Positions 1 through 58,723 of a stretch of 64,000 nt of DNA are shown one piece after another. Origin of the DNA: Camelus ferus. Lineage: Eukaryota. The stretch covers positions 79,980,001 through 80,044,000 of the forward strand of contig NC_045732.1 in assembly GCF_009834535.1 (NCBI RefSeq). Direction: 5' to 3'. Position 1 is the first letter of the stretch. Each line of letters opens with the position of its first letter. The notes below the pieces were generated by a model, which was not told the DNA's origin, did not search any database, and saw only the letters and a program-made list of their open reading frames with translations. The translations under genes were made by a program, and so were the position numbers.

Positions 1-1389
1 GAGAGGAGGTGACCGAGAGACCAAGCTAAACCGTGGCACGGTCAGCTCGCCGTCACGCCCTGGACGTGCTCCCCTGGTTCGCTCTGAATCGGCGCCGCCC
101 TGGAGGGCGCTCCCCACTCTGTGCTGTTCCCGGAAACAGATGTGTCCACCGGGACGCGGGGACGGGGGAGCGGGACCCCTGCAGGGAGATGCCTCCCTGG
201 GCTCGGTGACAGAGTCTCAAGGACTTTGGACCTCTAGGACAAGGGGAAGCGGCCTTGCAGGCCGCTGCTCATTCTGGCCCTGCTGATTCTGGATTGTGTA
301 GAGAAATGTGTTTTGAGAGAGCTGGTGAGTGTTCTCCCCGCCTTTGTTCTGGTCAAAACCCCTAGAGGGTCTGAAGAGCATCCAGGAGACGATGTGGGAC
401 GGCTGGAGCGGGCGCTGAGTGCTTGCCAGGGAGTCACCAGCCAGCGACGGCCTGACTCCCGGGCAAGAGGACGTCGGACTCAGAAAGAGCACCGTCTGCC
501 TCGCAGATGACTCTCGCCCTGTTGTAAAGTGTCCCTTGGCTCACGGAGCCGGTGTGTTAGACGTGCCGCACGGCCGCTTCACGTCCCAAGAAAGGGTCCT
601 AACTACAGCCCTGATGGAAGTGAGCAGTGCTGGTGTTCGCTGGGTGGGAGATCTTTTATACATTTGTTGGGGGGGGGGTTGGTCACTTGAGAGTAGGGTT
701 TCCAGTGGTTGCTACCTTCGAGGGTGACGGGCCTCCCCCCAGGCGTTTGACTGCAACCCCCCGTCTCTTCGGAGCCAGGCTGCAGTGCTCTCAGCCCTTG
801 GTGGAGGGGGTGGCCCTACTTTTCGGCGGGCCTCCGTGGGGGGCCCCTGGATCGTGAGCTGGAGACGCTGAGCTGCTGATCAGAAACTTCTGGCATCCTT
901 GGGGGACCCAGGAGGAAGACCCTCCTGCTCCGCGATGCATGAGTAATGGGGGGGAGACACCCCCGAGGTCAGAAGCCAGGCTGTCTGTCCCCTGACGGGC
1001 AGGCCCGGCCCAGCGGACCAGACCTTCCTGGGCTCGCCTCAGTGCTCGCTCCCCACCTCCTTGGGCGGGTGTCCGAGATGCCACAGCTTCAGATGCAAGA
1101 GGCCGATGGGGACCAAAGCCTGCCCCCGGCCGGGGTCTCCAGCCTCCGCGGGCTTATCTGGTGAGAGGTGTGCGGAATCGAACGCGAGAAAGAACACGGA
1201 CCCGCGGGTCTCGCAGATTGTTTATTTAGTCCCGGGGAGTTTTGCTTTTCTTTATTAAAGCCCAAAATGTTCATGGTTACAGGACGGTGCTCTTCGTGTG
1301 TCTCTAGTGGTCTGTGAGCTCAGCGCTTTGGGTTGTTCTGGAACTGTTCGCAGAGAGCACACTTGTAATCTGAAGAGCCCTCGGGCTCT

Positions 1390-1914
1390 TCATCGGCCTC
1401 GGGCCTCCTGGTTGGGGGCCATGAGCAGAAGGGCCGCGAGCAGCATGCAGTAACCCGTGTTGCACGTGGACACCACCGAGCTGGGATCGGGGCAAACGGG
1501 GGGGCTTCTGGGCAGCTCCCCTGCACCGTCCCTTCCGGCAGTAGCCGGGGGCACTAGCGTGACATTCCTGGAGGTGCCCTCCCCACTCGGGCCGCCCTGC
1601 TCGCTGGAGGGACGCTGCACTACCACCAACCTGGCCACCCGGCCGGCAGACAAGACGCCAGGGAGCACGAAGGCCCGGAAGCCGCTGGGCACCTGAGCAC
1701 GGGGGGCTTCCCTCTGGGTCTTCCTGTCGGCATCATTGGTGGAGTCATTCTGATGGAAAAATTGGGTGCATCTCATAGGTGGGACGGCTTGCTTCTTTCT
1801 CTTTGGGGTGGTTGTGCTGGAAGCGGGCCGAGCAGTTGCTCTCGGGTCACCTTTTCTCCGCATGTTCTCGATCAGCAGGGGCTTCTCTCTCTGAAAGTTG
1901 CAGTTGTGGTAGAT
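1390..1914 (-). CDS. HSFX3/HSFX4: HSFX3/HSFX4-type coding exon 2 (left copy); spliced product 339 aa
   Basis: Acceptor tcctttcag|ATC in phase 0. IYHNCNFQREKPLLIENMRRK completes the HSF domain. TGA at 1390-1392; intron 416 nt; AATAAA on - strand at 1251-1256 and 1221-1226. Confidence 0.9.
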   Translation of the reverse strand: MYHNCNFQREKPLLIENMRRKGDPRATARPASSTTTPKRKKQAVPPMRCTQFFHQNDSTNDADRKTQREAPRAQVPSGFRAFVLPGVLSAGRVARLVVVQRPSSEQGGPSGEGTSRNVTLVPPATAGRDGAGELPRSPPVCPDPSSVVSTCNTGYCMLLAALLLMAPNQEARGR

Positions 1915-2330
1915 CTGAAAGGACAAGAATCATTCTCGTCATTTCGGGGGAAATATTCACTCCTCCCCGCCCACCTCCGTCATAAAGGTCTTGTTTGACT
2001 GTGGAGAAAAGGTCTTTTTAAATTCCTGGCAAGTTTTGTTTCGCCCTGGAGTGTGCGCTCACTAAAGCTACGTGGTGCCTGGGCTGAGGTGTCACTCTAG
2101 CTCCCTGACGTGAAGTGGCCCCTGGGTCTTCGGTCACACCCGCAGGGCATCTCTAAGGGGCGAGCCTTCCATGACACGCCGGACTGCCTCAGCCTTCATT
2201 CAGTACTGGCTCACAGGAAAAAAGTCCCCCTCGGGAATGAACCCCGCCCAGCACATCACTCATCCGCTCAGGACTAGGAAGCTGTTCCAGGAACAGAGAA
2301 CTCGGGAGACGGAAGGGCTGTCTACGTTAC

Positions 2331-2825
2331 CATCAGCCTTTTCTTCCCCGGAGAGCGACCCAGAGTGCCGGGCAGGTGTATTTTCCTGAACCCATAGAGG
2401 TTCAGTTGGCGGATGAAGCTCTTCAAGCTGTCTGTTTCAAAGATCCTGTCTGCGCCGCGCCGGCGAAGAACCTCCCGCTGGAAAAGGTCTTCCTCGATGA
2501 TCAGCATGTCTCCCTTGTCGTTCCAGCGCACGGACGTGAAGGCCTCGTCCTCCACTATCATCCAGAGCTTTCTCGGGAAGGAGAGCCCAAGAACACCATG
2601 GGTTCCGTCCACGTTGGCGGGACCTGGGTTTGGGTCCTGTGGTGGCTGGTTGTCTTGGGAGCCTGGATCTTGGCTCTCGGCCTGGTCGCCGGGCCTCTCC
2701 AAAATCTCCCTCGAATCCACCTTTGGATCCGGGGATGAACCCGATGGGGCCCCCGCTGGGGGCTCTCCATCAGCTGCGGGGGCCGCCGTGGCCGTATATT
2801 CCTCGTCGGGGCTCTGACTCGCCAT
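2331..2825 (-). CDS. HSFX3/HSFX4: HSFX3/HSFX4-type heat shock transcription factor, coding exon 1 (left copy)
   Basis: MASQSPDEEY...LSFPRKLWMIVEDEAFTSVRWND...DSLKSFIRQLNLYGFRK is an HSF winged-helix DNA-binding domain with an HSFX3/4-like N-terminus. Donor ATG|gtaacg at 2331/2330; 165 codons. Confidence 0.93.
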
Positions 2826-4668
2826 GCAGCTAGTCTAGACCAGGCACACGCTCTCCCTGAGACCAGATCACTGAGCTCTCAGGGCAGAAGTGCCTTCAAT
2901 CTGAGCAGGGACGCCCAGTAAATAGTGTCCGCAGAATTCTAGAATCTCGGTAGCAGGGCAACCAGCGACTTTGGTCATCGTCCTCTTTATGTGTCACGTG
3001 AGGTCACAGAGTTGGTCTGGACAGGGAGCCCTGGCCGAGGGGAGGGGAGGGGAGGGGAGGGAGGGAGGCGAGGGGTACAGAGCCCCCAGCTTCTCTGTTT
3101 TCTAAAAGTGTAGGAAGGTATGTTCAAGTTCCCGGGAGAAGGCTCCCATCTGCTGCCAGGCACCTTTTTCCCAGGGGCCAGGCCCTGAGTGGGCGGACAG
3201 ACATGATCCTGTTTCCATCCCCAAAGGTTGGGGAGGCCTGTTGCCAGCCTCCGATTTGTTCAAGGGCCAGGCCCTGGCTGGCCCTGGCTTGGCTACCACC
3301 AAGGCGGCAGGGGTGAGATGGGCCCCGGGCGACTGCACCTCCCGGAAGTGGTGGTCCGAGTGGGCTGGTTGGCCAGGGCTGGCTGGCAGCGCCCCCCCCG
3401 CCCCCGCCACCAGCTCCTGCCTTGGTCTCTTCCAGCTGTTCCTCCTGGCTGGTCGGTCCAGCTCTGATGGGCCGTAAGGAAGTGTTCCGTTCTCCTGCCC
3501 CTGGGTCGAGCTGACCCCAGAGTGGGGCTGTGTGGGAGCGTGTGGGGGCACTCCCCACGTCCCACTTCAGTGTCACCAAAGCACCTGGCACATAGGGTTC
3601 CCCCCGTGCCGCGTGAGTGGATGGCCGCATCCTCCCCTGTGCTTTGGAGCCTCCTTTTGAGCTCCGCTGTCCGCAGCCCCACCCCTCTCCAGAGCACATG
3701 GGATCCTCTTTAGTGTCCATTTCTTGCCATAGAAACTCCTCGTGGCCCGAGAGCACTCACTTTCAGAACACCGGCCTTAGCCCGTGCCAGAGCACCTCCC
3801 TCAGACCTCGGATTCAGCCTCCCCTGAGGCTGCTCTAAGGCCCTCTTCCCTCTGTCACTGGGGGGGGGTTAGGCTCCTGCCCTGCCAGATTGCTGGCCTT
3901 CCGCTTCCAACTCGGCTCTGCCCCTGCTTCTTCCCCTTTGCAGTCCTTGATCTGGGGGTTCAGCATGTATTCTGATGTGTTGAGAGCAAGCATTTCCCTG
4001 GTCTGCTCCCAGGCCTGCCCTGCTGGCCTTCCCCGAGCCAGCCCCACCCCCAGCCCTGGGTCCCCGTCCCGCCGTCACCTCGGTGGCAGGTACACTGAAT
4101 AATTTTGCCTGCTCTGGGTGCGGTACTTCTCAAGGGGCCTACTCTACAGACTCACTCCCAAGGACAATTCCTACTTGTTGAGCTGGACGTGACCAACGGA
4201 AAGCCCGTCCACGTGTGACTGAAAATAGATGAGGCTCTGGGTGTGGGATGGGACAAATCCCGCCCGAGAGCCGTCTTCACCACGGATGGCAGGACAGACA
4301 GGACAGTGGTCTGGGGGGACACGTGTTCTGTAGCCGCTGTGGTGGCTGTTCTTCCTAGTCACTGCACAGGGAGAGACAATGGGACCTGGAAAGGCCCGTC
4401 TGCCAGGCTCCTAGGTCCTCATCCCAGCTCTGCCGCTAAGGAGAGGCGTCTGTCCTCTCTGAGGGCCACTCCCTGTTCCAGAAGGGGAGGGCAAGGGGTT
4501 CGAAAGAGATTCTCCCAAGGGGCCCTCGAGTCTGAGGACTGTCAGCCTTCGTGGAGCTCCTAGGCCGAGACTAGAGCTTGGGCTCAGGTCTTTGTGCCTC
4601 TAAACAGGTTTACAGAGCACTTGTTCGGGTCACTCCCTCCTGCAGGGACGTGTCCTTAGAGTTCGAAC

Positions 4669-4768
4669 NNNNNNNNNNNNNNNNNNNNNNNNNNNNNNNN
4701 NNNNNNNNNNNNNNNNNNNNNNNNNNNNNNNNNNNNNNNNNNNNNNNNNNNNNNNNNNNNNNNNNNNN
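4669..4768. other. 100-N gap of unknown size
   Basis: Exactly 100 N. Confidence 0.99.
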
Positions 4769-6330
4769 AGCCCTGGGAGGGCCTGGGTGGGATGAGCACT
4801 CGTGGGGTCCTGACTTCCTGACATCCGGGTCTCGGAGGGACTGGGGTCCTGGGATGAGGGGCGGGGCCTCGGGTGGTCCAAGGGGAGGCCAGTGCTGCCT
4901 GAGTGAAAGTGAGGACCCTGAGGGAGAACAGGGGATCCCGCACCCCGGGACAGTGTTGGTCCTTGGAGACCTTAGGGCAGGGTGACCAGCGGCGGCATTT
5001 CCTGACATCCGGGTCTCACAGGGTCTGGGGTCCTGGGATGAGGGGTGGGGCTTCGAGGGTTCCAAGGGGAGGCTACATACCGCCTGAGTCAAAGTGAGGA
5101 CCCCGAGGGAGAACGGATGGATCCTGCACCCCGGGACAGCGTTGGACCTTGGAGGCCTTGGGGCAGGGTGACCACCGGTGGCATTTCCTGACATCCGGGT
5201 CTCAGAGGGACTAGGGTCCTGATATGACGGGCGGGGCCTCGGGTTGCCAGAAGGTAGACCACATGCTGCCTGAGTCAAAGTGAGGACCCTGAGGGAGGAA
5301 GGAAGGGCCCCGGAACCCAGAAAACAGACCATCCACAGACAGGGAACCTTACTATCAGCTGCCCGGAGGCCCGAGGGCAGGACAGGCCCACGTGTCGTGT
5401 CATGACTGCGGCACCCTGGTCTCAGAGAGACCGGGGACTTTGTGTGAGATGGGGGGACCCTCAGATATTCAGAGGAGAGAATCCGATGTCCCACTGGGAG
5501 TGAAGGTGACGACTGCGAGCGAGCAGTGAGGGACCCTGGACCCTAAAACATAATGAGTCCTGGGAAGCCATAGGTCGGAATAACCAGAGGCGGCATTTCC
5601 TGACATCCGGGTCTCACAGGGACTGGGGTCCTGGGATGAGGGGCGGGGCCACGGGTGGGCAGAGGGGAGACGACATGCCGCCTGAGTGACGACGCTGAGG
5701 GAGAACTGAGGGGACCCGGGATCCAGAAGATAGGCCACCCCACAGAAAGGCGCCCTTGCTATCAGCTGTCCGGAGGCCCGAGGGGAGGACAGGCCCACGA
5801 GGTTTGTCCTGACTTCCGCATCCGGGTCTCAGAGAGACTGGGGACATAGAGAAAGGGAGGCGGGGGGCTCAGGTCTGCGGAGGAGAGAATCTCAGGGCCG
5901 CCTGGGAGTGAAGGTGACGACCGCGAGTTAGCACTCAGGGACCCTGCACCCCAGAAGAGAGTCAGTCCTGGGAGGCCATAGGGCGGGAGGACCTCAGGCA
6001 GCAGTTCCTGAAATGCGGGTCTCAGAGGGACTGGCGTCCTGGTATGACGGGCGGGGCCTCAGGTGGGCTGAGAGGGGAATCTCAACTCCTGCCAAGAGTC
6101 AAGGTGAGGACCCCGAGGGAGGAGTGAGGGGACCCGAGACCCCAGAACAGGGGGACGCAACCGATCCTGCCCCTGCTGGCAGCCCTGGGAGGCCCCCAGG
6201 CAGGATGAGCACACGTGGTGCGTCCTGACTTCCGCATCCAGGTCTCAGAGAGACCTCGGACTGATTATAAGGAGGGCCCCTCAGGTGGTTGGAGAGCCGA
6301 ATCCCAGGTCCCGCTTGGAGTCACGGTGAG
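4769..6330 (+). promoter_or_regulatory. MAGE promoter/first-exon module array upstream of S1 (8 cores, ~200-bp spacing)
   Basis: Repeated TTCCTGACATCCGGGTCTC or GACTTCCGCATCCGGGTCTC (paired ETS GGA cores), GGGGCGGGG GC boxes and GAGTCAA(G/A)|GTGAGG donors. Confidence 0.75.
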
Positions 6331-6701
6331 GACCCTGAGCTAGCGCGGAGAGGGCCTCCCGTGCTAGAAGAGTGGGAACCTGCCAGAGCCCAGGCCTCCC
6401 GCCACCACGCGGGTCCAGGGCTGTACCACAGTGTAGACCCGAGGTCTCCCCTCCTTTCTCTTCCAGGGTCTCCAGACACCGGGATGTGAAAGCCTAGGTC
6501 TGAGACACGTGTCCTCGGGTCACAGAGCACAGGAGGCCGGCAGTGCCGGGTGAGGTGTGGGCCCTGAGTGTGTACCCGGGGGCTCCCGGAACAGACGGGA
6601 ACCCACAAGGCCAACGTCCACTCCACACACCCCCTGTCGCCCCCAGAACCTCGGGCTGGTGCCGGCAGCACCCTGAGGAGTTGCCTCACTTCCCCCGTCA
6701 G

Positions 6702-6770
6702 GTTCACAGACGACCGTCCACCAGGAGGAGAGCCCCTGTGAGGCCGAGGGCACCCCTGAAGAGGAGACCT
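6702..6770 (+). other. Non-coding penultimate exon of MAGE S1 (69 nt), then a 74-nt intron 6771-6844. Homologs at 38115-38183, 26069-26137 and 60746-60814 (all -).
   Basis: ccccgtcag|GTTCAC...GAGACCT|gtaagt and ctctccccag|GCCC; canonical MAGE-A gene architecture. Confidence 0.8.
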
Positions 6771-6922
6771 GTAAGTCGCCTTTGTCAGAGCCCCTCAGGG
6801 TGGGTTTCTCAGCCCAGCCTGCTGACACACCCTCTCTCCCCCAGGCCCTTGGGTCTCCATTTGTCACCCCTTCCCTCGCTCCTCTCGGCTGCCCGACACC
6901 ACTCATCGTGCCCCCCGTTGAG

Positions 6923-7723
6923 ATGAGTGAGCTCCGCAAGGCTGCGGAAGACCTTCAGGACCCCAGAGACTCCCGGGGCCTCATGGATGTTCAGCAGATG
7001 GAGGCTGAGCAGGAGGGGGGCGCATCCCCCTGGTCCTCCTCCTCCTCAGTCTCCTCTTCCTACTCTGCCTGTGCCGTGTCCCTGCTCCATGATGCACAGC
7101 CTTCGATGGTGACTGACCTGGTGGGCTTCCTGCTCCTCAAGTATCACAGGAAGCAGCCGACCACCAGGGCAGAAATGCTGAGTATCTTCCTCAGAGAATA
7201 CCAGCACCACTTCCCTGCGGTCTTCAGCCAGGCCTCTGAGTACATGCAGCTGGTCTTTGGGGTGGATGTGAAGGAGGTGGATCCCGGGGGCCACTGGTAT
7301 GTCCTGGTCCCCACCCTGGGCCTCACCTGTGATGGGATGCTGGGCGATGGGCAGAGCATGCCCAAGAACGGCCTCCTGGTGATGCTCCTTTGCATGATCC
7401 ACCTGGAGGGAGAGCGCCTCCCTGAGGAGGAGGTGTGGGGAGCACTGAGCAAGCTGGGGCTGCGTGCTGGGAGGGAGCACTTCATCTACGGGGAGCCCAG
7501 GGAGCTCATCACCAAAGCGTGGGTGCAGGAGGGGTACCTGGAGTACCGGCAGGTGGCCAACAGCGATCCCGCTCGCTTCGAGTTCCTGTGGGGCCCCCGG
7601 GCCCACGCGGAGATCAGCAAGTTGCAAGTCCTGGAGCATGTACACAGGGCCAGTAGACGGGGTCCCAGTTCCTTCCCATCCCTGTCAGATGAGGCTGCTA
7701 GCGATGAGGAAGAGGAGGCCTGA
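6923..7723 (+). CDS. MAGEA: MAGE-A family protein, short form S1 (266 aa)
   Basis: Complete MAGE homology domain (LVGFLLLKY...FGVDVKEVDP...MPKNGLL...YGEPRELIT...LWGPRAHAE) with acidic tail. First true ATG at 6923 (the upstream homologous start is GTG). AATAAA at 8199-8204. Confidence 0.93.
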   Translation: MSELRKAAEDLQDPRDSRGLMDVQQMEAEQEGGASPWSSSSSVSSSYSACAVSLLHDAQPSMVTDLVGFLLLKYHRKQPTTRAEMLSIFLREYQHHFPAVFSQASEYMQLVFGVDVKEVDPGGHWYVLVPTLGLTCDGMLGDGQSMPKNGLLVMLLCMIHLEGERLPEEEVWGALSKLGLRAGREHFIYGEPRELITKAWVQEGYLEYRQVANSDPARFEFLWGPRAHAEISKLQVLEHVHRASRRGPSSFPSLSDEAASDEEEEA

Positions 7724-10700
7724 GCCAGACTTGCAGCCGGGCTCCTCCAGGCCCCTGTCCAGCAGCTTCTCCTGCCGGGCAGGAAGGGAGTCCATCCTTC
7801 ACTCTGTGTTTGCAGAGCGAGCAGTCAGCCTTGGAAGGAGTGAGGGCCCGGGCCAGCTCGGGGGGCACGGCGTACAGCATCTCTGGGCTCCTCCCGTCCT
7901 TTATGGTGACGTGGAAATTGATCTTTGTTTCCTGTAGGTGTTTTTCAGTGCTGTTCCTATTAATAGAAGATTTAATAAGCTTCAGTATCTAACTTTGTGA
8001 ATGACATTGATCACAACGTGTGTGTGCTTATCCAGTTCAAACACAACAGTTTTCCTCTTCTGTAAAGGAGACTGAAATCTCTCTCTTTTTTTTTTTTTTT
8101 TCTGTCATCCTGGATGACATAATATGGAATTGCAATTCGAATTGTTCGGGAAATGTGAGAGTAATTAGCAATAATATAGATGAGGGAAGATTTAGAACAA
8201 TAAAAGTAAAAATATTAACTCGCTTCTTATCCCTTCTTGTTTGTCATTTTATACGTGTAATATCCCTATGTTTAATTGGATTTCCACGGGTTATTTAAGA
8301 AAGTAGGAGAAAATCAGTCTGAATCAATAGGATCCCCGCTCACCGTCTCACTTCATCCGCACACATTCACCGAGCCTCTGCTCTTCTCTTTGGGAAGCTG
8401 GGGTTGGGGGCGGGGGTCCTTCTGTGGGAGGTGATGGTAATGAAGCTGGGTGGTGGCGGCAGGCAGACGTGCAGACTGGCACTTTTAGTGGTGAGAGGAA
8501 CGTGTCAGGTGGGAGGTTGCTGTGAGCAGTCCCTCTGGGATCGTGGATACATCTCCTGGGCGAGGGGGGAAGATGCACTTTGTTCAGGGATGCTTAGAGA
8601 CCTGGTTATCCTGCCTGAGCTGCTAGGACACTCAGAATGCTCCAACTGCAGGGAGGAGTGGCGTTTGACGTGGCTCACAGTGTACTCCGTCCTGGCATAT
8701 ATAGTTGAAGAGGTTTGGTAACCGCCCCAAACGCGGGGTAGGATTTACTGGGGTGTGTTCTTGGAAACGGTCTGCTGGACACTTACACTGATGGCTCAGC
8801 TCCCCTCGATGGTCAGACTCCAAAGCCATAGGTGCGGAATGGTCCTGGAATTCGCAGGGAGGGAACGCCCGCCGAGGCTGAATACAAAACAGCTCAGAAT
8901 CCTCCTCGGAGATGAAAGATGGTTCTTGGTGGGTATTCTAGCCTGATTTGTAAAGAGAAACTAGTTAACCATCCTTCCTCTGTGTCTAGTCTGCTGCCTG
9001 CCGCACAGGAAGGTCCTGGCTTTCAGGGTCCCTGATGCCACCTGAGCAGGTGCTCGGGCACTTCCGGTCCCGTGGAGGGCTGCTGAGTTTCCGAGGCTGA
9101 GCCTGTGTCCTGGCTTCAGGGCCAGAGAGCACGTTGCCAGCCCGCCGGCCTTGTGGGCGTTACTGCAGAGGGCAGGGCAGGAACGTGCTGTGGAGCCAGC
9201 GGGGTGAACCCTCCCTGCGGACAGGTACTAGGTCCTGCGAGAGCACATCGAATGTTGTATTTGAAAGGACGTGTCACAGGCAAGTGATTAGAGAACGTTG
9301 GAGGATTTCGAGGCACATGTGGCTTCTCAGAAGCTCCTCCAGCGGATGAAGGGAACTGCTTTCATCCCCAATTACACTAGCTGCTTTTCGTCGAGCACCT
9401 AGTACCCAGCGCTGTTCCGGAGAGACCTTGAGTGTGGCCCATGTCTTGTCTTCCTCTCCTTCCTGGACGCTGAGTGGAGGGAATATGAGATTCTTCGTGT
9501 AAACCTACAAATATTTTGTAGTAAAAAGGTGTTAAAGATCACTTTAGTAAATCCGAAGACGGAAAATAAAGTCCGTTTAAGAATCAATAGCACATTGGCC
9601 GGCAAAAAGATACCACGTGCCCTGGCTGCTGGGTTATGTGGAAAGGTATTTGGGGTCCAGGCGGTCCTTACTCCAGGGGCTGAGCTCCCAAAGAAGCAGG
9701 AAATGCTCCTGAGAGACTGTTTGATGCAACCTCGGACCAGGCAAAGTCCCTTCAGGGCCAAGGGGAGGAGCCAGACAGCTCCTCCCAATGGCACAGTCGC
9801 AAGGTGTGTGTGTCTCCTTGGACTGCTGTCTTCCTAGAGCCTTCCAGGACAGCTGTGATGTAGAGACGGGGGAGGAGGGAGGAGCATTTTGGACTGTGGG
9901 CACTGCAGAAGCTGTCTTGGGGGTGGTACGGCAGAGGGACCAGGGAGGGGCCAAGACCCCTGGGAGCAGGAGGCAGGGACACAGCACAGGAGTCTGTAGC
10001 TGAGCTGAAAGGCAAGAACTGCACGAGGACGGTGCACTCCTCTCCCCACTGCCCTCCTCCCGGGATCCACCCCTCTCTCCCTGTTCCCTTACCCACGGGG
10101 CAGGTCAGGCCTGGCCAGGAGGAGGGGATTGACGCGGATGGGGGTCCGGTGCCTGATCTGCTGGGGATGGTGAGAAGAACCTGGATCCAGGAAGCTGTGT
10201 GAGGCAGCAGCCCCAATGGCTCTGTAGAGATTGGAGTGCCCTGTGCCTGGGGTTCAACCCAGGGCTTCCCTGACCCCTGTGGTATATAGCACCTTGGCCC
10301 CACCCTCTCGAACTTGGCCTCACTCTGCCCAGCTTGGGGTTTTATCCTTCCTGTCCATTTACCGACAAGCGCTCAGCCCACGATGGGACCCAGTGGTGAA
10401 GGTTGTCTGCAATCATCTGTAAGTGAAAGTCCCCGGATAGGAATCTTCTTTCACAATCACAAATGATTCAGGTAAGTTGACAGGAGTCGATGTAGCCTGT
10501 TGGTGTCCCAGTGGCTGGTTAATAAGAACCCTTCGCTATGTGAGTAAGTGACAAAATGCTACAATTATCAATCATTCTTCAGATGATTCCCCATGTGATT
10601 CCCAAACTTTGATGAAACTGGTCACCTTGGCTGGGTAACGATGAGAGTTCCTTTCTGAGATTTTTCCTGAAAAGTGGTGCAGGGTTGACCCTTCAGCCAC

Positions 10701-14640: not shown

Positions 14641-14661
14641 GTGACCACTTTTTGTTTGAAC

Positions 14662-35320: not shown

Positions 35321-35323
35321 ATA

Positions 35324-42812: not shown

Positions 42813-42814
<2 letters not shown>

Positions 42815-48600: not shown

Positions 48601-48629
48601 GGATCCTGGGACCAATTTCCACGTAGGGG

Positions 48630-49505: not shown

Positions 49506-49833
49506 ATCACAGCAGGAAAGGGGCCTCCTCTCCTTTCTCTCCCGCCTTTCAGGGAGGTGAGGACCTTGGTGTGAGAGGACGGGTCAGATCATCTGAAGGA
49601 ACCACGCCTTGGCAACAGAGAGAAGAGTCCCGGGTCCTCCCAGGAGTCAAGGTGAGGGCCCGAGGGAAGGGTGAGGGGACCCGCACGCCCACAACAAAGA
49701 TGGGACACCAAAGGAAACCTCGTTCAGCCCTAGAAACCCTGGGAAGGTCGATAAGCTTGTCCTCCCACAAGGCCACTGGGTCCCCACCTGTCACCCCGGC
49801 CCAGACTCCTGTCAGCTGCCAACACCTGTCATT

Positions 49834-50664: not shown

Positions 50665-52019
50665 GCCAGACTTGCAGCCGCGCTCCTTCCAGGCCCCTGT
50701 CCAGCAGCTTCTCCTGCCGGGCAGGAAGGGAGTCCATCCTTCACTCTGTGTTTGCAGAGCGAGCGGTCAGCCTTGGAAGGAGTGAGGGCCCGGGCCAGCT
50801 CGGGGGGCACGGCGTACAGCATCTCTGGGCTCCTCCCGTCCTTTATGGTGACGTGGAAATTGATCTTTGTTTCCTGTAGGTGTTTTTCAGTGCTGTTCCT
50901 ATTAATAGAAGATTTAATAAGCTTCAGTATCTAACTTTGTGAATGACATTGATCACAACGTGTGTGTGCTTATCCAGTTCAAACACAACAGTTTTCCTCT
51001 TCTGTAAAGGAGACTGAAATCTCTCTCTTTTTTTTTTTTTTTTTTCCTGTCATCCTGGATGACATAATATGGAATTGCAATTAGAATTGTTCGGGAAATG
51101 TGAGAGTAATTAGCAATAATATAGATGAGGGAAGATTTAGAACAATAAAAGTAAAAATATTAACTCGCTTCTTATCCCTTCTTGTTTGTCATTTTATACG
51201 TGTAATATCCCTATGTTTAATTGGATTTCCACGGGTTATTTAAGAAAGTAGGAGAAAATCAGTCTGAATCAACAGGATCCCCGCTCACCGTCTCACTTCA
51301 TCCGCACACATTCACCGAGCCTCTGCTCTCCGGAGGGCTCTGTGTTAGTGGGGACACTAGGAAAAGCAAGACACACCCCACACCTAGAAGGACAGGCTAG
51401 GAGCCCAGTCACATCAGGAAGATGGTGACATGTCCCTGAAGTCCCACAGAACAAGGGAAAGAAGCGGCGAGGCGGAGGGGGTCCGGGAGAGAGCACCCAA
51501 GTGCAAGTGCGCAGAGCCAGGGCAGGTGGGGGCTTTGGGAAGCTGGGCTTCCTTCCGTGGGAGGTGACGGTAATGAAGCTGGGTGGTGGCGGCGGCCAGA
51601 CTTGAAGAAGGCGTGTTTTGGGTTTCAGAAGCCACAGTTCGGATGGAAGGGCGGCTGGGAGGGGGCAAAGGTTGTTCCTTGACTCCCTTCCTAGGAGCTC
51701 GGTGTTGAGTCCAGCTGGGAACGCTCCCCCACCCCTCAGTGTAACCTAGCCTCTAATCGGGAGAATTTACTTAGTTCCATTTACGAGGCATGCTTTTTGG
51801 CTGATTAGCTCTTCCACATCCTACTGAGCTGCGTGTTCTCTAACATGACCTGGATAACAAACCAACCAGCCAAGTCCCAGAGGAGGGAGTGGAAGGGTCT
51901 GGGGCCAAAGAAAATCAGAAGCAACTGCCAATCATCGCGGTTCCAACAGGCAGCGCGCCCCGCGCGAGGTGCTTGGCGCACATCGCACGCACCCCTGCAG
52001 TCCTGCGGGCCGGGCCTCC

Positions 52020-52140
52020 TCACACCCGCCCACTGCACAGATGAAGACCCTGGGGTCGTGGGGCTCGGGAACCTTCCCAGGATCACGTGCTAGTAAGTGA
52101 CGGGGTGGGGCCGAGACCCCTGGTCTGAATTCATCTAGAG
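52020..52140 (+). mobile_element. MIR SINE fragment
   Basis: cccactgcacagatgaagaccctgggg...cccaggatcacgtgctagtaagtg. Confidence 0.55.
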
Positions 52141-52487
52141 CCCACGCTGCGCCCACCCATCGCAGCCTGCGGCCCGCCTCCTGACCCAGAGTCCACTTGT
52201 CTCCTCAGTGTCCTCATGGAGTCTGTCGGGTGACAGAAAGTAGGATCCTGAGGCCCAGGTAGTAAAAGCTGGACCAAGAAAGGAAGGTGACTGTGACAAT
52301 CAAAGCCAGGGTGAGGACTGTCTGCGGTTTCTTGAGAGCTGACCCTGCCAGGTGGTGGCACTGCTGTCCAGTCCCAGCCCTTATCCCACACGACAGCACC
52401 CTGCCCTGGTCTCCTCCTTCCTCGGGGCCCTCCTGGCCAACTCGAACCTGACCTGCTGACTTGGTCATCACGGGGGGTGGGGGTGTG

Positions 52488-52590
52488 GAGAGAGAGAGAG
52501 GGAGAGACAGAGACAGAGAGAGAGAGAGACACAGAGAGACGGAGACAGACAGAGACAGAGACAGAGAGACAGTCACGGAGACAGACACAG
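52488..52590 (+). repeat. (GA)n/(GAGACA)n simple repeat
   Basis: Seen directly. Confidence 0.9.
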
Positions 52591-55500
52591 GGACAGAGCG
52601 AGAGCCAGAGCGCGAGACTGGGCTTGAGACTGGGATTGGGATTGTGGTTGACTGCGTCTGGAAGGCCACATTCCTTATGGGATAACATCCCTAACGTAGA
52701 CTTTTCAGAAGCTGGAGAAAAGGTAACACTAGGGAACATCCTGACACCGTCTCCCCGACCCCAGTGGGGGAGGGGTGCGGCTGTAACAGAGCTTGCCTGG
52801 GGCTCCTTTGGAAAGTGCATTGCACCCGACGGCCCCTGTGCCATTTGAGCTTCTAAGGATGGCTTTCCCGGGTCTCCTTGGCCTTGGACAACTACGAAAT
52901 GAGTCATCACTGGACAAGGAAGACTCCCCTTTGCTGCTGTCCCTGCGGGGTGCAGGTGGCTTCCGGGCAGACACAAGGCCCCCAGTCTGGGCTGAGGCCG
53001 TGGGCTCGGGCGTCCGCAGTGGACCACAGGCCGGCTCTACTTCTCCGTCGGGCGGATCCTAGGCCCACGACTCCACCTTCCCCGGCCCGGCCCGGGCCTT
53101 CCCTGCCACCTGCCCCGGGTCAGACGGGAAGAGTCCACGGCGCTGCACCGCAGAGCGCTCAGCACCGCCAAGGGAATGCAGGCGCCCTCCCACCTGCTCG
53201 AGCTGTCGCAGTGACCGTGCACAGCTGCTTTCAAGGACACTAAAGCCAGCTCCTGGGGGACATACAAATTTGTTCGTTCCAAGATAGGCTGGGGACCCCG
53301 TTCACATCCTAGTCTGCTGTCCTCAAGGACCTCTTTCCTGGTCTGGAGGGGGAGGCAGATACACCCAAGGTCTCAGGGAGACAGGAGCACCCCATCTTGG
53401 GACTGGACATGCAAGGCGGGCTGTGGGAGCCTTGGGAGGGAGCCTGGGACCGGAGGAAGCCCTGACTGCCGAGGTGGCCTGGAAGCCGGGCCGGCCTTGA
53501 AGCCGGGCCCCAACATGCAGAGCGGCCTCTGGATAGAGACGGGCATCGCCACCCGACGAGGCAGCTTGAGGACACGCCCAGACAGGGGAGTTCTTGGCGG
53601 GTCCCAGAGCAGCTGGGGACTGGGTGCGGGTCTGGCCCAGGGCCCATGGATGGTGACGGAGAGCGCTTGGGTGGTCCTCTGGGCTGGCGGACACCAGGGG
53701 CTAAGGCAGGTGCAGCGGCCGGCGGGCCAGGCTGGGAAAGGCAGGCCTTGGACGTCGTGAGGGCTGGTATCGAGTAACAAGTGTCCTGAGCCATGGCTGA
53801 GAGCGACCCCTGGGGCGCTACACGTAGCCACGGCCCAGCCGGCCCCCCCACTGGGGGGGGGCAGGGGTGCGTGGGAGGGAGGGAGGCCGACCTGTGAGGG
53901 GGCAGGCCCACCAGACCCAGGGTGTGAGGGAGGGCTGGAAGGAGCGGGCGGCAGGCGAGGCCACAGGGCTGGGATCGGCCCACCGATGTCCCAGCCTTTG
54001 GGCCCCCTTCTGAGACGCCCCCATGGCCTCCACTGAAGTTCGAACTCTAAGGACACGTCCCTGCAGGAGGGAGTGACCCGAACAAGTGCTCTGTAAACCT
54101 GTTTAGAGGCACAAAGACCTGAGCCCAAGCTCTAGTCTCGGCCTAGGAGCTCCACGAAGGCTGACAGTCCTCAGACTCGAGGGCCCCTTGGGAGAATCTC
54201 TTTCGAACCCCTTGCCCTCCCCTTCTGGAACAGGGAGTGGCCCTCAGAGAGGACAGACGCCTCTCCTTAGCGGCAGAGCTGGGATGAGGACCTAGGAGCC
54301 TGGCAGACGGGCCTTTCCAGGTCCCATTGTCTCTCCCTGTGCAGTGACTAGGAAGAACAGCCACCACAGCGGCTACAGAACACGTGTCCCCCCAGACCAC
54401 TGTCCTGTCTGTCCTGCCATCCGTGGTGAAGACGGCTCTCGGGCGGGATTTGTCCCATCCCACACCCAGAGCCTCATCTATTTTCAGTCACACGTGGACG
54501 GGCTTTCCGTTGGTCACGTCCAGCTCAACAAGTAGGAATTGTCCTTGGGAGTGAGTCTGTAGAGTAGGCCCCTTGAGAAGTACCGCACCCAGAGCAGGCA
54601 AAATTATTCAGTGTACCTGCCACCGAGGTGACGGCGGGACGGGGACCCAGGGCTGGGGGTGGGGCTGGCTCGGGGAAGGCCAGCAGGGCAGGCCTGGGAG
54701 CAGACCAGGGAAATGCTTGCTCTCAACACATCAGAATACATGCTGAACCCCCAGATCAAGGACTGCAAAGGGGAAGAAGCAGGGCAGAGCCGAGTTGGAA
54801 GCGGAAGGCCAGCAATCTGGCAGGGCAGGAGCCTAACCCCCCCCAGTGACAGAGGGAAGAGGGCCTTAGAGCAGCCTCAGGGGAGGCTGAATCCGAGGTC
54901 TGAGGGAGGTGCTCTGGCGCGGACTAAGGCCGGTGTTCTGAAAGTGAGTGCTCTCGGGCCACGAGGAGTTTCTATGGCAAGAAATGGACACTAAAGAGGA
55001 TCCCATGTGCTCTGGAGAGGGGTGGGGCTGCGGACAGCGGAGCTCAAAAGGAGGCTCCAAAGCACAGGGGAGGATGCGGCCATCCACTCACGCGGCACGG
55101 GGGGAACCCTATGTGCCAGGTGCTTTGGTGACACTGAAGTGGGACGTGGGGAGTGCCCCCACACGCTCCCACACACAGCCCCACTCTGGGGACAGCTCGA
55201 CCCAGGGGCAGGAGAACGGAACACTTCCTTACGGCCCATCAGAGCTGGACCGACCAGCCAGCAGGAACAGCTGGAAGAGACCAAGGCAGGAGCTGGTGGC
55301 GGGGTGGGGGGAGGGGGCGCTGCCAGCCAGCCCGGGCCAACCAGCCCACTCGGACCACCACTTCCGGGAGGTGCAGTCGCCCGGGGCCCATCTCACCCCT
55401 GCCGCCTTGGTGGTAGCCAAGCCAGGGCCAGCCAGGGCCTGGCCCTTGAACAAATCGGAGGCTGGCAACAGGCCTCCCCAACCTTTGGGGATGGAAACAG

Positions 55501-55704
55501 GATCATGTCTGTCCGCCCACTCAGGGCCTGGCCCCTGGGAAAAAGGTGCCTGGCAGCAGATGGGAGCCTTCTCCCGGGAACTTGAACATACCTTCCTACA
55601 CTTTTAGAAAACAGAGAAGCTGGGGGCTCTGTACCCCTCGCCTCCCCTCCCCTCCCCTCCCCTCCCCTCCGCCAGGGCTCCCTGTCCAGACCAACTCTGT
55701 GACC

Positions 55705-55720
55705 TCACGTGACACATAAA
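55705..55720 (+). promoter_or_regulatory. Putative HSFX core promoter: TCACGTGA E-box next to a CATAAA TATA-like box (mirror at about 2986-3001)
   Basis: ctcacgtgacacataaagag lies about 165 bp upstream of the ATG in both copies. Motif-only evidence. Confidence 0.35.
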
Positions 55721-55880
55721 GAGGACGATGACCAAAGTCGCTGGTTGCCCTGCTACCGAGATTCTAGAATTCTGCGGACACTATTTACTGGGCGTCCCTG
55801 CTCAGATTGAAGGCACTTCTGCCCTGAGAGCTCAGTGATCTGGTCTCAGGGAGAGCGTGTGCCTGGTCTAGACTAGCTGC

Positions 55881-56375
55881 ATGGCGAGTCAGAGCCCCGA
55901 CGAGGAATATACGGCCACGGCGGCCCCCGCAGCTGATGGAGAGCCCCCAGCGGGGGCCCCATCGGGTTCATCCCCGGATCCAAAGGTGGATTCGAGGGGG
56001 ATTTTGGAGAGGCCCGGCGACCAGGCCGAGAGCCAAGATCCAGGCTCCCAAGACAACCAGCCACCACAGGACCCAAACCCAGGTCCCGCCAACGTGGACG
56101 GAACCCATGGTGTTCTTGGGCTCTCCTTCCCGAGAAAGCTCTGGATGATAGTGGAGGACGAGGCCTTCACGTCCGTGCGCTGGAACGACAAGGGAGACAT
56201 GCTGATCATCGAGGAAGACCTTTTCCAGCGGGAGGTTCTTCGCCGGCGCGGCGCAGACAGGATCTTTGAAACAGACAGCTTGAAGAGCTTCATCCGCCAA
56301 CTGAACCTCTATGGGTTCAGGAAAATACACCTGCCCGGCACTCTGGGTCGCTCTCCGGGGAAGAAAAGGCTGATG
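55881..56375 (+). CDS. HSFX3/HSFX4: HSFX3/HSFX4-type coding exon 1 (right copy)
   Basis: Inverted copy of 2331-2825 with one aa difference (DSRG vs DSRE). Donor ATG|gtaacg at 56375/56376. Confidence 0.93.
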
Positions 56376-56791
56376 GTAACGTAGACAGCCCTTCCGTCTC
56401 CCGAGTTCTCTGTTCCTGGAACAGCTTCCTAGTCCTGAGCGGATGAGTGATGTGCTGGGCGGGGTTCATTCCCGAGGGGGACTTTTTTCCTGTGAGCCAG
56501 TACTGAATGAAGGCTGAGGCAGTCCGGCGTGTCATGGAAGGCTCGCCCCTTAGAGATGCCCTGCGGGTGTGACCGAAGACCCAGGGGCCACTTCACGTCA
56601 GGGAGCTAGAGTGACACCTCAGCCCAGGCACCACGTAGCTTTAGTGAGCGCACACTCCAGGGCGAAACAAAACTTGCCAGGAATTTAAAAAGACCTTTTC
56701 TCCACAGTCAAACAAGACCTTTATGACGGAGGTGGGCGGGGAGGAGTGAATATTTCCCCCGAAATGACGAGAATGATTCTTGTCCTTTCAG

Positions 56792-57316
56792 ATCTACCAC
56801 AACTGCAACTTTCAGAGAGAGAAGCCCCTGCTGATCGAGAACATGCGGAGAAAAGGTGACCCGAGAGCAACTGCTCGGCCCGCTTCCAGCACAACCACCC
56901 CAAAGAGAAAGAAGCAAGCCGTCCCACCTATGAGATGCACCCAATTTTTCCATCAGAATGACTCCACCAATGATGCCGACAGGAAGACCCAGAGGGAAGC
57001 CCCCCGTGCTCAGGTGCCCAGCGGCTTCCGGGCCTTCGTGCTCCCTGGCGTCTTGTCTGCCGGCCGGGTGGCCAGGTTGGTGGTAGTGCAGCGTCCCTCC
57101 AGCGAGCAGGGCGGCCCGAGTGGGGAGGGCACCTCCAGGAATGTCACGCTAGTGCCCCCGGCTACTGCCGGAAGGGACGGTGCAGGGGAGCTGCCCAGAA
57201 GCCCCCCCGTTTGCCCCGATCCCAGCTCGGTGGTGTCCACGTGCAACACGGGTTACTGCATGCTGCTCGCGGCCCTTCTGCTCATGGCCCCCAACCAGGA
57301 GGCCCGAGGCCGATGA
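56792..57316 (+). CDS. HSFX3/HSFX4: HSFX3/HSFX4-type coding exon 2 (right copy)
   Basis: Acceptor tcctttcag|ATCTAC at 56791/56792; stop at 57314-57316; AATAAA at 57450-57455 and 57480-57485. Confidence 0.9.
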   Translation: MYHNCNFQREKPLLIENMRRKGDPRATARPASSTTTPKRKKQAVPPMRCTQFFHQNDSTNDADRKTQREAPRAQVPSGFRAFVLPGVLSAGRVARLVVVQRPSSEQGGPSGEGTSRNVTLVPPATAGRDGAGELPRSPPVCPDPSSVVSTCNTGYCMLLAALLLMAPNQEARGR

Positions 57317-58723
57317 AGAGCCCGAGGGCTCTTCAGATTACAAGTGTGCTCTCTGCGAACAGTTCCAGAACAACCCAAAGCGCTGAGCTCACAGACCACT
57401 AGAGACACACGAAGAGCACCGTCCTGTAACCATGAACATTTTGGGCTTTAATAAAGAAAAGCAAAACTCCCCGGGACTAAATAAACAATCTGCGAGACCC
57501 GCGGGTCCGTGTTCTTTCTCGCGTTCGATTCCGCACACCTCTCACCAGATAAGCCCGCGGAGGCTGGAGACCCCGGCCGGGGGCAGGCTTTGGTCCCCAT
57601 CGGCCTCTTGCATCTGAAGCTGTGGCATCTCGGACACCCGCCCAAGGAGGTGGGGAGCGAGCACTGAGGCGAGCCCAGGAAGGTCTGGTCCGCTGGGCCG
57701 GGCCTGCCCGTCAGGGGACAGACAGCCTGGCTTCTGACCTCGGGGGTGTCTCCCCCCCATTACTCATGCATCGCGGAGCAGGAGGGTCTTCCTCCTGGGT
57801 CCCCCAAGGATGCCAGAAGTTTCTGATCAGCAGCTCAGCGTCTCCAGCTCACGATCCAGGGGCCCCCCACGGAGGCCCGCCGAAAAGTAGGGCCACCCCC
57901 TCCACCAAGGGCTGAGAGCACTGCAGCCTGGCTCCGAAGAGACGGGGGGTTGCAGTCAAACGCCTGGGGGGAGGCCCGTCACCCTCGAAGGTAGCAACCA
58001 CTGGAAACCCTACTCTCAAGTGACCAACCCCTCCCCCCCCAACAAATGTATAAAAGATCTCCCACCCAGCGAACACCAGCACTGCTCACTTCCATCAGGG
58101 CTGTAGTTAGGACCCTTTCTTGGGACGTGAAGCGGCCGTGCGGCACGTCTAACACACCGGCTCCGTGAGCCAAGGGACACTTTACAACAGGGCGAGAGTC
58201 ATCTGCGAGGCAGACGGTGCTCTTTCTGAGTCCGACGTCCTCTTGCCCGGGAGTCAGGCCGTCGCTGGCTGGTGACTCCCTGGCAAGCACTCAGCGCCCG
58301 CTCCAGCCGTCCCACATCGTCTCCTGGATGCTCTTCAGACCCTCTAGGGGTTTTGACCAGAACAAAGGCGGGGAGAACACTCACCAGCTCTCTCAAAACA
58401 CATTTCTCTACACAATCCAGAATCAGCAGGGCCAGAATGAGCAGCGGCCTGCAAGGCCGCTTCCCCTTGTCCTAGAGGTCCAAAGTCCTTGAGACTCTGT
58501 CACCGAGCCCAGGGAGGCATCTCCCTGCAGGGGTCCCGCTCCCCCGTCCCCGCGTCCCGGTGGACACATCTGTTTCCGGGAACAGCACAGAGTGGGGAGC
58601 GCCCTCCAGGGCGGCGCCGATTCAGAGCGAACCAGGGGAGCACGTCCAGGGCGTGACGGCGAGCTGACCGTGCCACGGTTTAGCTTGGTCTCTCGGTCAC
58701 CTCCTCTCAAGAGCCCACGCTGC

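What the first reader, a model, noticed from the sequence alone, without database searches (positions are those of the whole stretch)
1..58708. Probable >23-kb HSFX/MAGE-A palindrome whose left arm hides about 13.9 kb in a 100-N gap
Seen: 1-4668 mirrors 54038-58708 and 4769-9195 mirrors 35691-40116, and the two left blocks meet exactly at the 100-N gap. On the right they are joined by 13.9 kb (40117-54037) containing MAGE S2. Inference: one arm of at least 23 kb around a 26.5-kb spacer (9196-35690), with a sixth MAGE copy missing from the assembly. Established: human Xq28 has an inverted HSFX/MAGEA duplication, and X palindromes carry testis genes. Here the arm content (HSFX3/4-type, EOLA tail, short MAGEs) looks like an independent lineage-specific build.
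Basis: partly seen in the sequence, partly recalled or inferred. Interest (0 to 1): 0.8.

Follow-up and report, generated by a model that had tools for sequence, protein, structure and literature searches.

The report
Camelid X palindrome, one arm unassembled
This camel X-chromosome stretch is a real, old palindrome carrying HSFX and MAGE genes; the alpaca has the same palindrome complete, which indicates that the 100-N gap in the camel hides the missing middle of the left arm.

Summary
Bases 1-4668 mirror 54038-58708 (99.55%) and 4769-9195 mirror 35691-40116 (99.84%). Both left blocks stop at the 100-N run and are letter-identical to the right arm for 747 and 3,312 bases next to it.

The genome is Camelus, most likely C. 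bactrianus. I consulted no Camelus assembly. I compared a gapless alpaca X record instead.

An alpaca palindrome (P1) is colinear with the whole window, reversed. It reads [HSFX-S2-S1] spacer [S1-S2-HSFX]. Both inner junctions match the camel's to the base. In the alpaca arm that corresponds to the camel left arm, the mirror of 40117-48674 lies directly upstream of the S1 block, exactly where the camel has Ns.

Copies cluster by species: camel arms differ by 0.17%, camel and alpaca by about 8.6%. The duplication therefore predates the camel/alpaca split, and gene conversion keeps the arms alike.

- The palindrome is shared by camel and alpaca, not camel-specific.
- Its arms probably run beyond the window; they are at least 40 kb in alpaca.
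- The gap could hide more than 13.9 kb, because the alpaca carries about 18 S2-HSFX modules.

This is a new member of a known kind.

The parts
1..4668 (-). Left arm, outer block A' (mirror of 54038-58708). It holds HSFX copy 1. It is cut by the window's left edge.
   Evidence: 99.55% inverted match; 15 difference events; both arms carry derived states when polarised with alpaca.
1326..2825 (-). HSFX3-like gene, left copy. Exon 1 is about 2328-2825 and exon 2 about 1450-1920. The C-terminal tail is in another frame.
   Evidence: mirror ORF has Pfam HSF_DNA-bind. (tblastn of HSFX relatives). (one residue differs from the right copy, G40E).
4669..4768 (.). 100-N run, the conventional length for a gap of unknown size. 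It is the predicted site of the unassembled mirror of 40117-54037, which would include S2'.
   Evidence: matches run to both edges and are letter-identical next to it. (the alpaca ortholog has the mirrored block here).
4769..9195 (+). Left arm, inner block B' (mirror of 35691-40116). It holds tandem ~186/408-base arrays and MAGE S1'.
   Evidence: 99.84%. (arrays 4815-6078). (abrupt junction at 9195|9196, inside a contig, shared with alpaca).
6782..7723 (+). MAGE S1', left copy. The ORF starts at 6782. The 266-aa product from the first ATG starts at 6923.
   Evidence: Pfam MAGE 1.3e-19. (identical to the right copy). (100% to a C. ferus 'MAGE 8' isoform).
9196..35690 (.). Spacer of 26.5 kb, asymmetric. 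It holds a long MAGE (24926-26281, minus strand), a promoter-like array (about 26.5-29.5 kb) and a 5'-truncated L1 3' piece at its right end (about 35320-35690).
   Evidence: no inverted homology inside. (MAGE). (colinear with the alpaca spacers throughout).
35691..40116 (-). Right arm, inner block B, with MAGE S1 (37162-38103, minus strand).
   Evidence: (junction 35690|35691 conserved in alpaca).
40117..54037 (+). Right arm, middle block C (13.9 kb), present once in the assembly. Its parts are S1-side arrays, a centre (41391-44376), S2-side arrays (44377-47418), MAGE S2 (49834-50664, plus strand) and unique stretches at 47419-49755 and 51595-54037.
   Evidence: internal repeat map. (MAGE). 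(S2 identical to the C. ferus protein). (colinear with at least 7 alpaca places).
54038..58708 (+). Right arm, outer block A, with HSFX copy 2 (55881 to about 57380, plus strand).
58724..59062 (-). Last coding exon of an EOLA (CXorf40) gene, just outside the window-limited arm end.
   Evidence: residues 36-111 match chain 5y7d_A (CXorf40A) residues 83-158, E = 6e-36; the same HSFX/EOLA-tail adjacency is seen in sheep.
59157..62158 (-). Start of a second, diverged unit: a direct repeat of 24495-26935 at 91.5%. It holds a long MAGE (59588-60958) whose N-terminal part is out of frame, and it ends at the second 100-N run.

Best explanation
This is a real, evolutionarily old palindrome of a camel chromosome that is most likely the X. 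Each arm carries, from inside to outside, a short MAGE-A-like gene (S1), a second short MAGE (S2) head-to-head with it, and an HSFX3-like gene. The arms surround a 26.5-kb asymmetric spacer.

Shown:
- The inverted duplication existed before camels and alpacas split, because both arm/spacer junctions are the same to the base in the two species.
- The arms are nevertheless 99.6-99.8% alike within the camel and far from the alpaca copies. The explanation I draw from this is that recurrent arm-to-arm gene conversion keeps them alike, as in primate X and Y palindromes.

Inferred:
- The 100-N run at 4669-4768 is a gap of unknown size. The assembler could not place the second copy of the near-identical middle block there.
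- The left arm therefore really contains a mirror of 40117-54037, at least 13.9 kb, with a sixth MAGE (S2').
- The arm continues beyond window base 1.
For: Arms and junctions in the camel:
- The inverted blocks are 99.55% and 99.84% identical.
- Both inner junctions lie inside contigs and are abrupt. The left block's contig runs on into 6 kb of unique spacer, which rules out a haplotig.
- Both arms carry derived substitutions when polarised with alpaca. In the outer block 6 are derived in the left arm and 3 in the right. These are two real copies.
- The arms are letter-identical for 747 and 3,312 bases on either side of the gap. That is the condition under which assemblers drop one copy.

The alpaca palindrome P1:
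- P1 (record CM108756.1, about 104.19-104.27 Mb) is tiled by L003, L018, L016, L023 and L004. There is no N in any fetched locus, and 845 bases in the spacer were not fetched.
- It is colinear with the window reversed, from 60653 down to 4991 and then back out.
- L023 reads camel-equivalent 48674->39761, then 4991->9195, then 9196->17520 without a break.
- The two S2 genes are 58.5 kb apart in alpaca. A mirrored copy in the camel predicts 54.8 kb (coordinates).
- The junction alignment is identical on both sides in both species.
- Alpaca arms are 99.75% identical over 20.8 kb and mirror-symmetric out to at least 53 kb from the centre.

Concerted evolution: in the S1 block the camel left and right copies differ by 0.17%, camel and alpaca by 8.5-8.8%, and alpaca copies among themselves by 0.05-0.76%.

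Genes:
- Pfam finds MAGE and HSF_DNA-bind domains.
- The nearest named relatives of the HSF gene are 'HSFX member 3-like'.
- The EOLA tail matches solved CXorf40A.

Literature:
- X palindromes with arms over 8 kb and over 99% identity are often missing or misassembled in whole-genome assemblies (PMC8327919).
- HSFX3 sits in a palindrome in human and mouse (PMC9122934).
Against: - Nothing from this genome spans the gap. The hidden block is inferred from another species and from the pattern of identity.
- The evidence that the scaffolder used to place and orient the contig ending at 4668 is unknown.
- The second alpaca copy (P2) has 7.9 kb of extra sequence between the S1 arrays and the middle block in the corresponding arm, so arms are not always perfectly symmetric at this spot.
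- A camel-specific deletion of the middle block in the left arm cannot be excluded.
- The three odd-sized runs do stand one-for-one for real letters.
- X linkage and testis expression are inferred, not shown.
Confidence: 0.8

Rival explanations
1. The palindrome is real, but the camel locus is much more amplified than the assembly shows, as in alpaca. The gap, and perhaps the single-copy middle block, would then stand for several collapsed S2-HSFX or whole 34-kb units, not for one 13.9-kb mirror copy.
For: - The alpaca has the identical S2 protein at about 18 places over 575 kb, in both orientations. These include a 14.28-kb tandem unit (camel-equivalent 43776-58240) and units about 34.4 kb apart.
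- The camel window itself has the start of a second 34.66-kb unit (24495-26935 against 59157-61615).
- Dromedary annotation lists at least four accession numbers for one identical S1-type 266-aa protein (names only, no sequence fetched).
- The P2 arm in alpaca has 7.9 kb extra exactly at the gap's position.
Against: - Neither camel copy of the outer block shows the alpaca tandem junction. Both read straight through camel position 58240.
- The camel's second unit is 91.5% identical to the first, so it is old and not a collapsed near-identical copy.
- No read-depth data are available.
Confidence: 0.15
2. The left arm truly lacks the middle block. The gap is short, and the camel left arm is A' joined almost directly to B' after a 13.9-kb deletion, giving an asymmetric palindrome with five MAGE copies.
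For: - Rearrangements in primate X palindromes are concentrated around the spacer and inner arms (PMC8327919).
- The two arms of alpaca P2 differ by a 7.9-kb insertion or deletion at this place.
Against: - A deletion junction would be unique sequence that an assembler joins without a gap.
- Both matches run at 100% identity right up to both edges of a round 100-N run. The junction would therefore have to lie inside those 100 letters.
- In every alpaca copy examined, the HSFX block is preceded by S2 and the S1 arrays are followed by the centre block.
Confidence: 0.04
3. Assembly artefact: the left blocks are a misplaced second haplotype or a false duplication of the right-hand sequence, and there is no palindrome.
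For: Identity of 99.6-99.8% is in the range of allelic difference. The blocks abut a scaffold join.
Against: - The inner left block is continuous with 6 kb of unique spacer that has no counterpart next to the right block.
- That junction and the whole spacer are found in the same arrangement in a gapless alpaca assembly.
- Order and orientation of both left blocks are exactly those of the alpaca arm.
Confidence: 0.01

Closest known systems
Large palindromes of the primate X chromosome (Warburton 2004, from my own knowledge; Jackson et al. 2021, PMC8327919)
   Same: - Inverted arms over 99% identical with a unique spacer and protein-coding gene families in the arms.
- Conservation of the structure between species for tens of millions of years.
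- Arms kept alike by gene conversion.
- Frequently missing or incomplete in whole-genome assemblies.
   Different: - A different order of mammals.
- The 26.5-kb spacer is colinear between camel and alpaca, with base-identical boundaries. In contrast, 7 of 12 primate palindromes have lost spacer orthology.
- In alpaca the whole structure is embedded in a 575-kb array of tandem and inverted copies.
- Expression was not examined here.
HSFX3 / 4930567H17Rik palindrome of human and mouse (Kruger et al. 2022, PMC9122934)
   Same: An HSFX3-type two-exon gene, with the DNA-binding domain split across the splice site, lies in each arm of an X-linked palindrome. The gene diverges fast.
   Different: - Orthology of the palindromes themselves was not tested.
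- In sheep, HSFX lies in the spacer of a different, MAGE-only palindrome. This argues that placing HSFX in the arms is a change specific to the camel/alpaca lineage.
- The flanking genes named in that paper (IDS, TMEM185A) are outside this window.
HSFX amplification on the bovine X (Hughes et al. 2020, PMC7706723)
   Same: HSFX is multicopy with very high identity within the family, which was read there as ongoing gene conversion. The alpaca shows the same kind of amplification, with about 18 HSFX-S2 modules.
   Different: The bovine copies were not described as one palindrome. Co-amplification with HSFY was not examined in camelids.
Human Y-chromosome palindromes P1-P8 (Rozen et al. 2003, from my own knowledge; PMC8600007)
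   Same: Arm-to-arm gene conversion explains why arms are more alike within a species than orthologous arms are between species.
   Different: This is the X chromosome rather than the Y, the arms are much smaller, and the genes are different.

Membership tests
Large sex-chromosome palindrome (criteria of Jackson et al. 2021: arms >8 kb, arm-to-arm identity >99%) | Two copies in inverted orientation on one chromosome, separated by a spacer. | tested here: met
   The spacer is 9196-35690, and both junctions lie inside contigs.
Large sex-chromosome palindrome (criteria of Jackson et al. 2021: arms >8 kb, arm-to-arm identity >99%) | Arm-to-arm identity above 99%. | tested here: met
   99.55% and 99.84%. 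Substitutions alone are 0.16-0.19%.
Large sex-chromosome palindrome (criteria of Jackson et al. 2021: arms >8 kb, arm-to-arm identity >99%) | Arm longer than 8 kb. | tested here: inconclusive
   As assembled, the left arm is two blocks of 4.67 and 4.43 kb (9.1 kb together) on either side of a gap. The arm would be 23 kb if the gap holds the mirror block. The alpaca ortholog has arms of at least 40 kb.
Large sex-chromosome palindrome (criteria of Jackson et al. 2021: arms >8 kb, arm-to-arm identity >99%) | Arms evolve in concert, by gene conversion. | tested here: met
   The junctions are shared to the base by camel and alpaca, yet copies group by species. Distances are 0.17% within the camel and 8.5-8.8% between species.
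Large sex-chromosome palindrome (criteria of Jackson et al. 2021: arms >8 kb, arm-to-arm identity >99%) | Location on a sex chromosome, with arm genes expressed mainly in testis. | not testable with these tools
   The window's own protein lies on a 118.5-Mb record. MAGE-A, HSFX and EOLA are X-linked in other mammals (PMC9122934, PMC7706723). No expression data were available.
HSFX3 palindrome of human and mouse | An HSFX3-type gene in each arm. | tested here: met
   Pfam HSF_DNA-bind in the exon 1 ORF. Two exons in both copies. The nearest named relatives are 'HSFX member 3-like'.
HSFX3 palindrome of human and mouse | The same palindrome by descent: shared boundaries, and flanking IDS and TMEM185A. 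| not tested
   No human or mouse sequence was compared, and the flanking genes lie outside the window. The sheep locus has HSFX in the spacer of a different palindrome, which argues against shared descent of the arms.
False duplication / haplotig | The duplicate is allelic to its partner along the whole contig. | tested here: not met
   The contig 4769-15349 leaves the homology at 9195 and continues in unique spacer. The same arrangement is seen in alpaca.

The most novel reading that the evidence does not exclude
The camelid palindrome would be the same structure by descent as the HSFX3 palindromes of human and mouse. An HSFX/MAGE/EOLA palindromic state would then have persisted since the common ancestor of these orders (roughly 90 million years), far longer than any X palindrome shown to be conserved so far. 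The sheep locus speaks against this: HSFX there is single in the spacer of a MAGE-only palindrome. One sheep locus does not exclude it.
Probability: 0.1. Interest if true: 0.7.

Novelty: new member of a known kind. Interest (0 to 1): 0.45.

Why it matters
Few sex-chromosome palindromes are known to be conserved between species, and nearly all of those are from primates and mouse. This one has both boundaries preserved to the base between Old World and New World camelids, a colinear spacer, and clear concerted evolution of the arms. It offers a clean non-primate case for studying how gene conversion and selection keep such structures.

It also shows that this camel assembly under-represents an HSFX/MAGE gene cluster. 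At least one MAGE gene and 13.9 kb are missing. This affects gene counts, read mapping and any study of fertility genes in camels. The alpaca's expansion of the same module to about 18 copies points to rapid, lineage-specific amplification of germ-line genes.

Tried and rejected
1. Search for resumed homology beyond the L1 piece at 35690. If the L1 were a simple insertion into a longer arm, homology should resume. It does not, and the L1 junction is ancestral, so the L1 marks the true arm boundary.
2. Long ORFs in the middle block and spacer (40004-40972, 44795-45841, 52131-53027, 41786-42214, 43158-43568, 20654-21223, 62754-63572, 63146-63883). None has a Pfam match. I treat them as chance ORFs in GC-rich DNA.
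3. A young-duplication reading. Arm divergence is about 8% of the camel-alpaca divergence, which would date a duplication to roughly 1-1.5 million years. I rejected this because both junctions are shared with alpaca.
4. Look-ups of alpaca isoforms P0009 and P0121 found nothing on record. Other cluster members had to be used instead.
5. Rice's whale locus. It shows only two tandem 266-aa MAGE genes and no HSFX within 10 kb, so it says nothing about the palindrome.
6. Papers on camel assemblies did not let me identify which assembly the window comes from, or how the 100-N joins were made.
7. The text of PMC8327919 does not name HSFX, MAGEA or EOLA, so the human palindrome's number and content could not be taken from it.
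8. The search of earlier findings gave only notes on this same window and unrelated palindromes.


Full report
OBSERVATION. Bases 1-4668 are the reverse complement of 54038-58708 (99.55%), and 4769-9195 are the reverse complement of 35691-40116 (99.84%). The window has five N runs: 4669-4768 and 62159-62258 (100 each), and 15350-15553, 16295-16428 and 16953-17111 (204, 134, 159). The two left blocks end at the edges of the first 100-N run. On the right they are joined by 13,921 bases without N.

A base-by-base alignment finds 15 difference events in the outer block, 13 of them within 54781-55999. It finds 6 in the inner block, all within 8081-8795, near the spacer. There is no difference in the 747 bases left of the gap or the 3,312 bases right of it. 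The outer match starts at window base 1, so the repeat may continue to the left of the window.

JUNCTIONS AND GAPS. The inner ends of the repeat are abrupt, at 9195|9196 and 35690|35691, and both lie inside contigs. The left contig continues into about 6 kb that has no partner elsewhere in the window. The right block abuts a short interspersed-repeat piece on the minus strand. That piece reads like the last 17 codons and the 3' end of an L1 ORF2; this is my own reading of the letters, and a second copy lies at 14661-15043 at 88%. Homology does not resume beyond it.

The three odd-sized N runs in the spacer span exactly as many bases as the alpaca has between the same flanking aligned positions (205, 135 and 167). 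They therefore stand one-for-one for real letters, and the sequence around them is colinear. I used only lengths and did not inspect what the alpaca has in those intervals. The two 100-N runs have the length that is conventional for gaps of unknown size.

GENES. Pfam finds the MAGE homology domain in five ORFs:
- S1' at 6782-7723 (+) and S1 at 37162-38103 (-), which encode identical proteins.
- S2 at 49834-50664 (+), 79% identical to S1.
- A long MAGE in the spacer at 24926-26281 (-).
- A long MAGE outside the arm at 59588-60958 (-), with its N-terminal part out of frame.

An HSF DNA-binding domain lies in 55881-56384 (+) and its mirror 2322-2825 (-). tblastn with relatives shows two exons in both copies, with the C-terminal tail in another frame. 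The two copies differ by one residue. The nearest named relatives are 'HSFX member 3-like'. The ORF 58724-59062 (-) matches the C-terminal half of solved CXorf40A/EOLA1 (E = 6e-36).

S2 is 100% identical to a Camelus ferus protein, and the window's own product sits on a 118.5-Mb record that also carries C. bactrianus proteins. The genome is therefore a camel, most likely C. bactrianus. MAGEs of about 266 aa are also annotated in whales, hippo, deer and bears.

ANATOMY OF THE RIGHT ARM. S1 (-) and S2 (+) lie head-to-head and form an older, nested inverted repeat of about 90% identity (36501-41390 against 51329-44377). It has tandem ~190/410-base arrays and a 3-kb centre at 41391-44376. Three stretches of the 13.9-kb block are unique in the window: 41391-44376, 47419-49755 and 51595-54037. 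The left contig ends 46 bases beyond a tandem array on one side, and in unique sequence on the other (54038).

COMPARISON WITH ALPACA. I therefore consulted no Camelus assembly and used another species.

The alpaca S2 ortholog (P0003, 92% identical) is encoded at 10 listed and 8 further places on one record, CM108756.1, at 104.14-104.72 Mb, in both orientations. All fetched loci are free of N. Seven places are colinear with camel 39761-60653 at 92-96%. Others show a tandem junction, camel-equivalent 58240|43776, with a period of 14.28 kb.

I walked inward using other MAGE proteins. This tiles one palindrome, P1, almost completely: L003, L018, L016, 845 unfetched bases, L023 and L004. Read from left to right, it is the camel window reversed, as follows:
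- 60653 down to 39761.
- The S1 block.
- The right junction with the L1 piece.
- The whole spacer down to 9196.
- The left junction.
- The S1 block again (9195->4991).
- Without a break, 39761->48674 and on to 60654.

So in the alpaca arm that corresponds to the camel left arm, the mirror of the middle block lies exactly where the camel has the 100-N run. The two alpaca S2 genes are 58.5 kb apart. A mirrored S2' in the camel would be 54.8 kb from S2.

An alignment of the four junction types shows both junctions identical to the base in the two species. Alpaca P1 arms are 99.75% identical over 20.8 kb, and mirror symmetry about the same centre continues to at least 53 kb from it. The arms are therefore at least 40 kb.

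A second copy of the whole palindrome, P2 at 104.557-104.645 Mb, is 98.8-99.7% identical to P1. It has 7.9 kb of extra sequence between the S1 arrays and the middle block in the corresponding arm.

CONCERTED EVOLUTION. In the S1 block the two camel copies differ by 0.17%, the alpaca copies by 0.05-0.76%, and camel from alpaca by 8.5-8.8%. The tree groups copies by species with support 1.0. In the outer block, camel differs from alpaca by 2.5% and arm from arm by 0.19%. Since the junctions show that the duplication is older than the species split, the arms must have been homogenised repeatedly; gene conversion is the known mechanism. Both camel arms carry derived states, so they are two real sequences. 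Arm GC is 0.59-0.61 against 0.40-0.47 in the gene-free spacer. This fits GC-biased conversion but is confounded by gene content.

WHAT THE GAP HIDES. The existence of a gap, the perfect identity next to it, and the fact that both contig ends fall in the middle of a module that is continuous in every alpaca copy all point to an unplaced second copy of a near-identical block. I put 0.8 on a palindrome whose left arm holds at least the mirror of 40117-54037. Within that, its exact size is open: 13.9 kb if like P1, about 22 kb if like P2.

A larger collapsed array gets 0.15. In its favour are the alpaca amplification, the camel's own diverged second 34.66-kb unit (24495-26935 against 59157-61615, 91.5%), and at least four accession numbers for one S1-type protein in dromedary (names only). 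A true deletion in the left arm gets 0.04 and an artefact 0.01. No data from this genome cross the gap.

WIDER CONTEXT. A sheep X locus (L029) has the same gene order: S1-like (-), arrays, an S2-like remnant (+), HSFX (+), then an EOLA tail (-). Its palindrome is different, with 10.1-kb arms at 96.9% that hold only the MAGE, and HSFX single in a 44-kb spacer. A Rice's whale locus has two tandem 266-aa MAGEs and no HSFX nearby. The gene neighbourhood is thus old, while the palindrome that puts HSFX and both short MAGEs into the arms was seen only in camel and alpaca among the loci examined.

Known parallels:
- The HSFX3 palindrome of human and mouse (PMC9122934).
- HSFX amplification in cattle (PMC7706723).
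- HSFX expression after meiosis in primates (PMC13616518).

Whether the camelid structure shares descent with the human one was not tested.

VERDICT. This is a new member of a known kind, of moderate interest.

Noticed in passing
window 15350-15553, 16295-16428, 16953-17111: The three odd-sized N runs span exactly the number of bases the alpaca has between the same flanking aligned positions (205, 135, 167). They therefore stand one-for-one for real letters (masked, or very well sized), unlike the two 100-N runs. I used only lengths and did not look at the alpaca letters there.
   Followed up: partly
window 24495-26935 vs 59157-61615: A direct repeat at 91.5% defines a 34.66-kb unit: spacer-right part, S1, S2, HSFX, EOLA tail, long MAGE. 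The alpaca has the same unit in near-identical tandem copies spaced 34.3-34.5 kb apart on both sides of its palindrome.
   Followed up: partly
window 36501-41390 vs 44377-51329: S1 and S2 lie head-to-head and form an older nested inverted repeat (about 90%) around a 3-kb centre at 41391-44376. In alpaca the same centre is flanked at one place by two S1 genes, in a separate palindrome with arms at least 12.8 kb long at 99.64% (L012/L013). Sheep also has an S1-like/S2-like head-to-head pair.
   Followed up: partly
alpaca L001, L009, L010 (CM108756.1, 104.14 and 104.62-104.72 Mb): A 14.28-kb S2-HSFX unit (camel-equivalent 43776-58240) is tandemly repeated. The identical S2 protein is encoded at about 18 places over 575 kb. 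This is an ampliconic array that I did not find described in the papers searched.
   Followed up: partly
window 57174-57380 and mirror 1326-1532: In both camel HSFX copies the conserved acidic/Cys-x-x-Cys C-terminal tail is in a different frame from the rest of exon 2. The alpaca gene is called as an intact 339-aa product. The frame change is shared by both arms, as expected under gene conversion.
   Followed up: partly
window 54781-55999 and 8081-8795: Differences between the arms are clustered. 13 of 15 events in the outer block fall in 1.2 kb spanning the HSFX upstream region and the start of exon 1, including one amino-acid change (G40E). All inner-block differences lie within 1.1 kb of the spacer boundary. 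The alpaca arms also differ most in the last 50 bases before the boundary.
   Followed up: no
window 62159-64000: The second 100-N run falls in the array upstream of the outer long MAGE. The 1.7 kb to its right has no match in any fetched alpaca locus and no other copy in the window.
   Followed up: partly
sheep locus L029 (CM043025.1, 80.22-80.29 Mb): An inverted repeat of 10.1 kb at 96.9% holds one MAGE per arm. HSFX and two EOLA-tail pieces lie in the 44-kb spacer, together with a 24-kb block of degenerate tandem repeats (31.7-55.3 kb). A gene model there fuses HSF and MAGE domains.
   Followed up: partly
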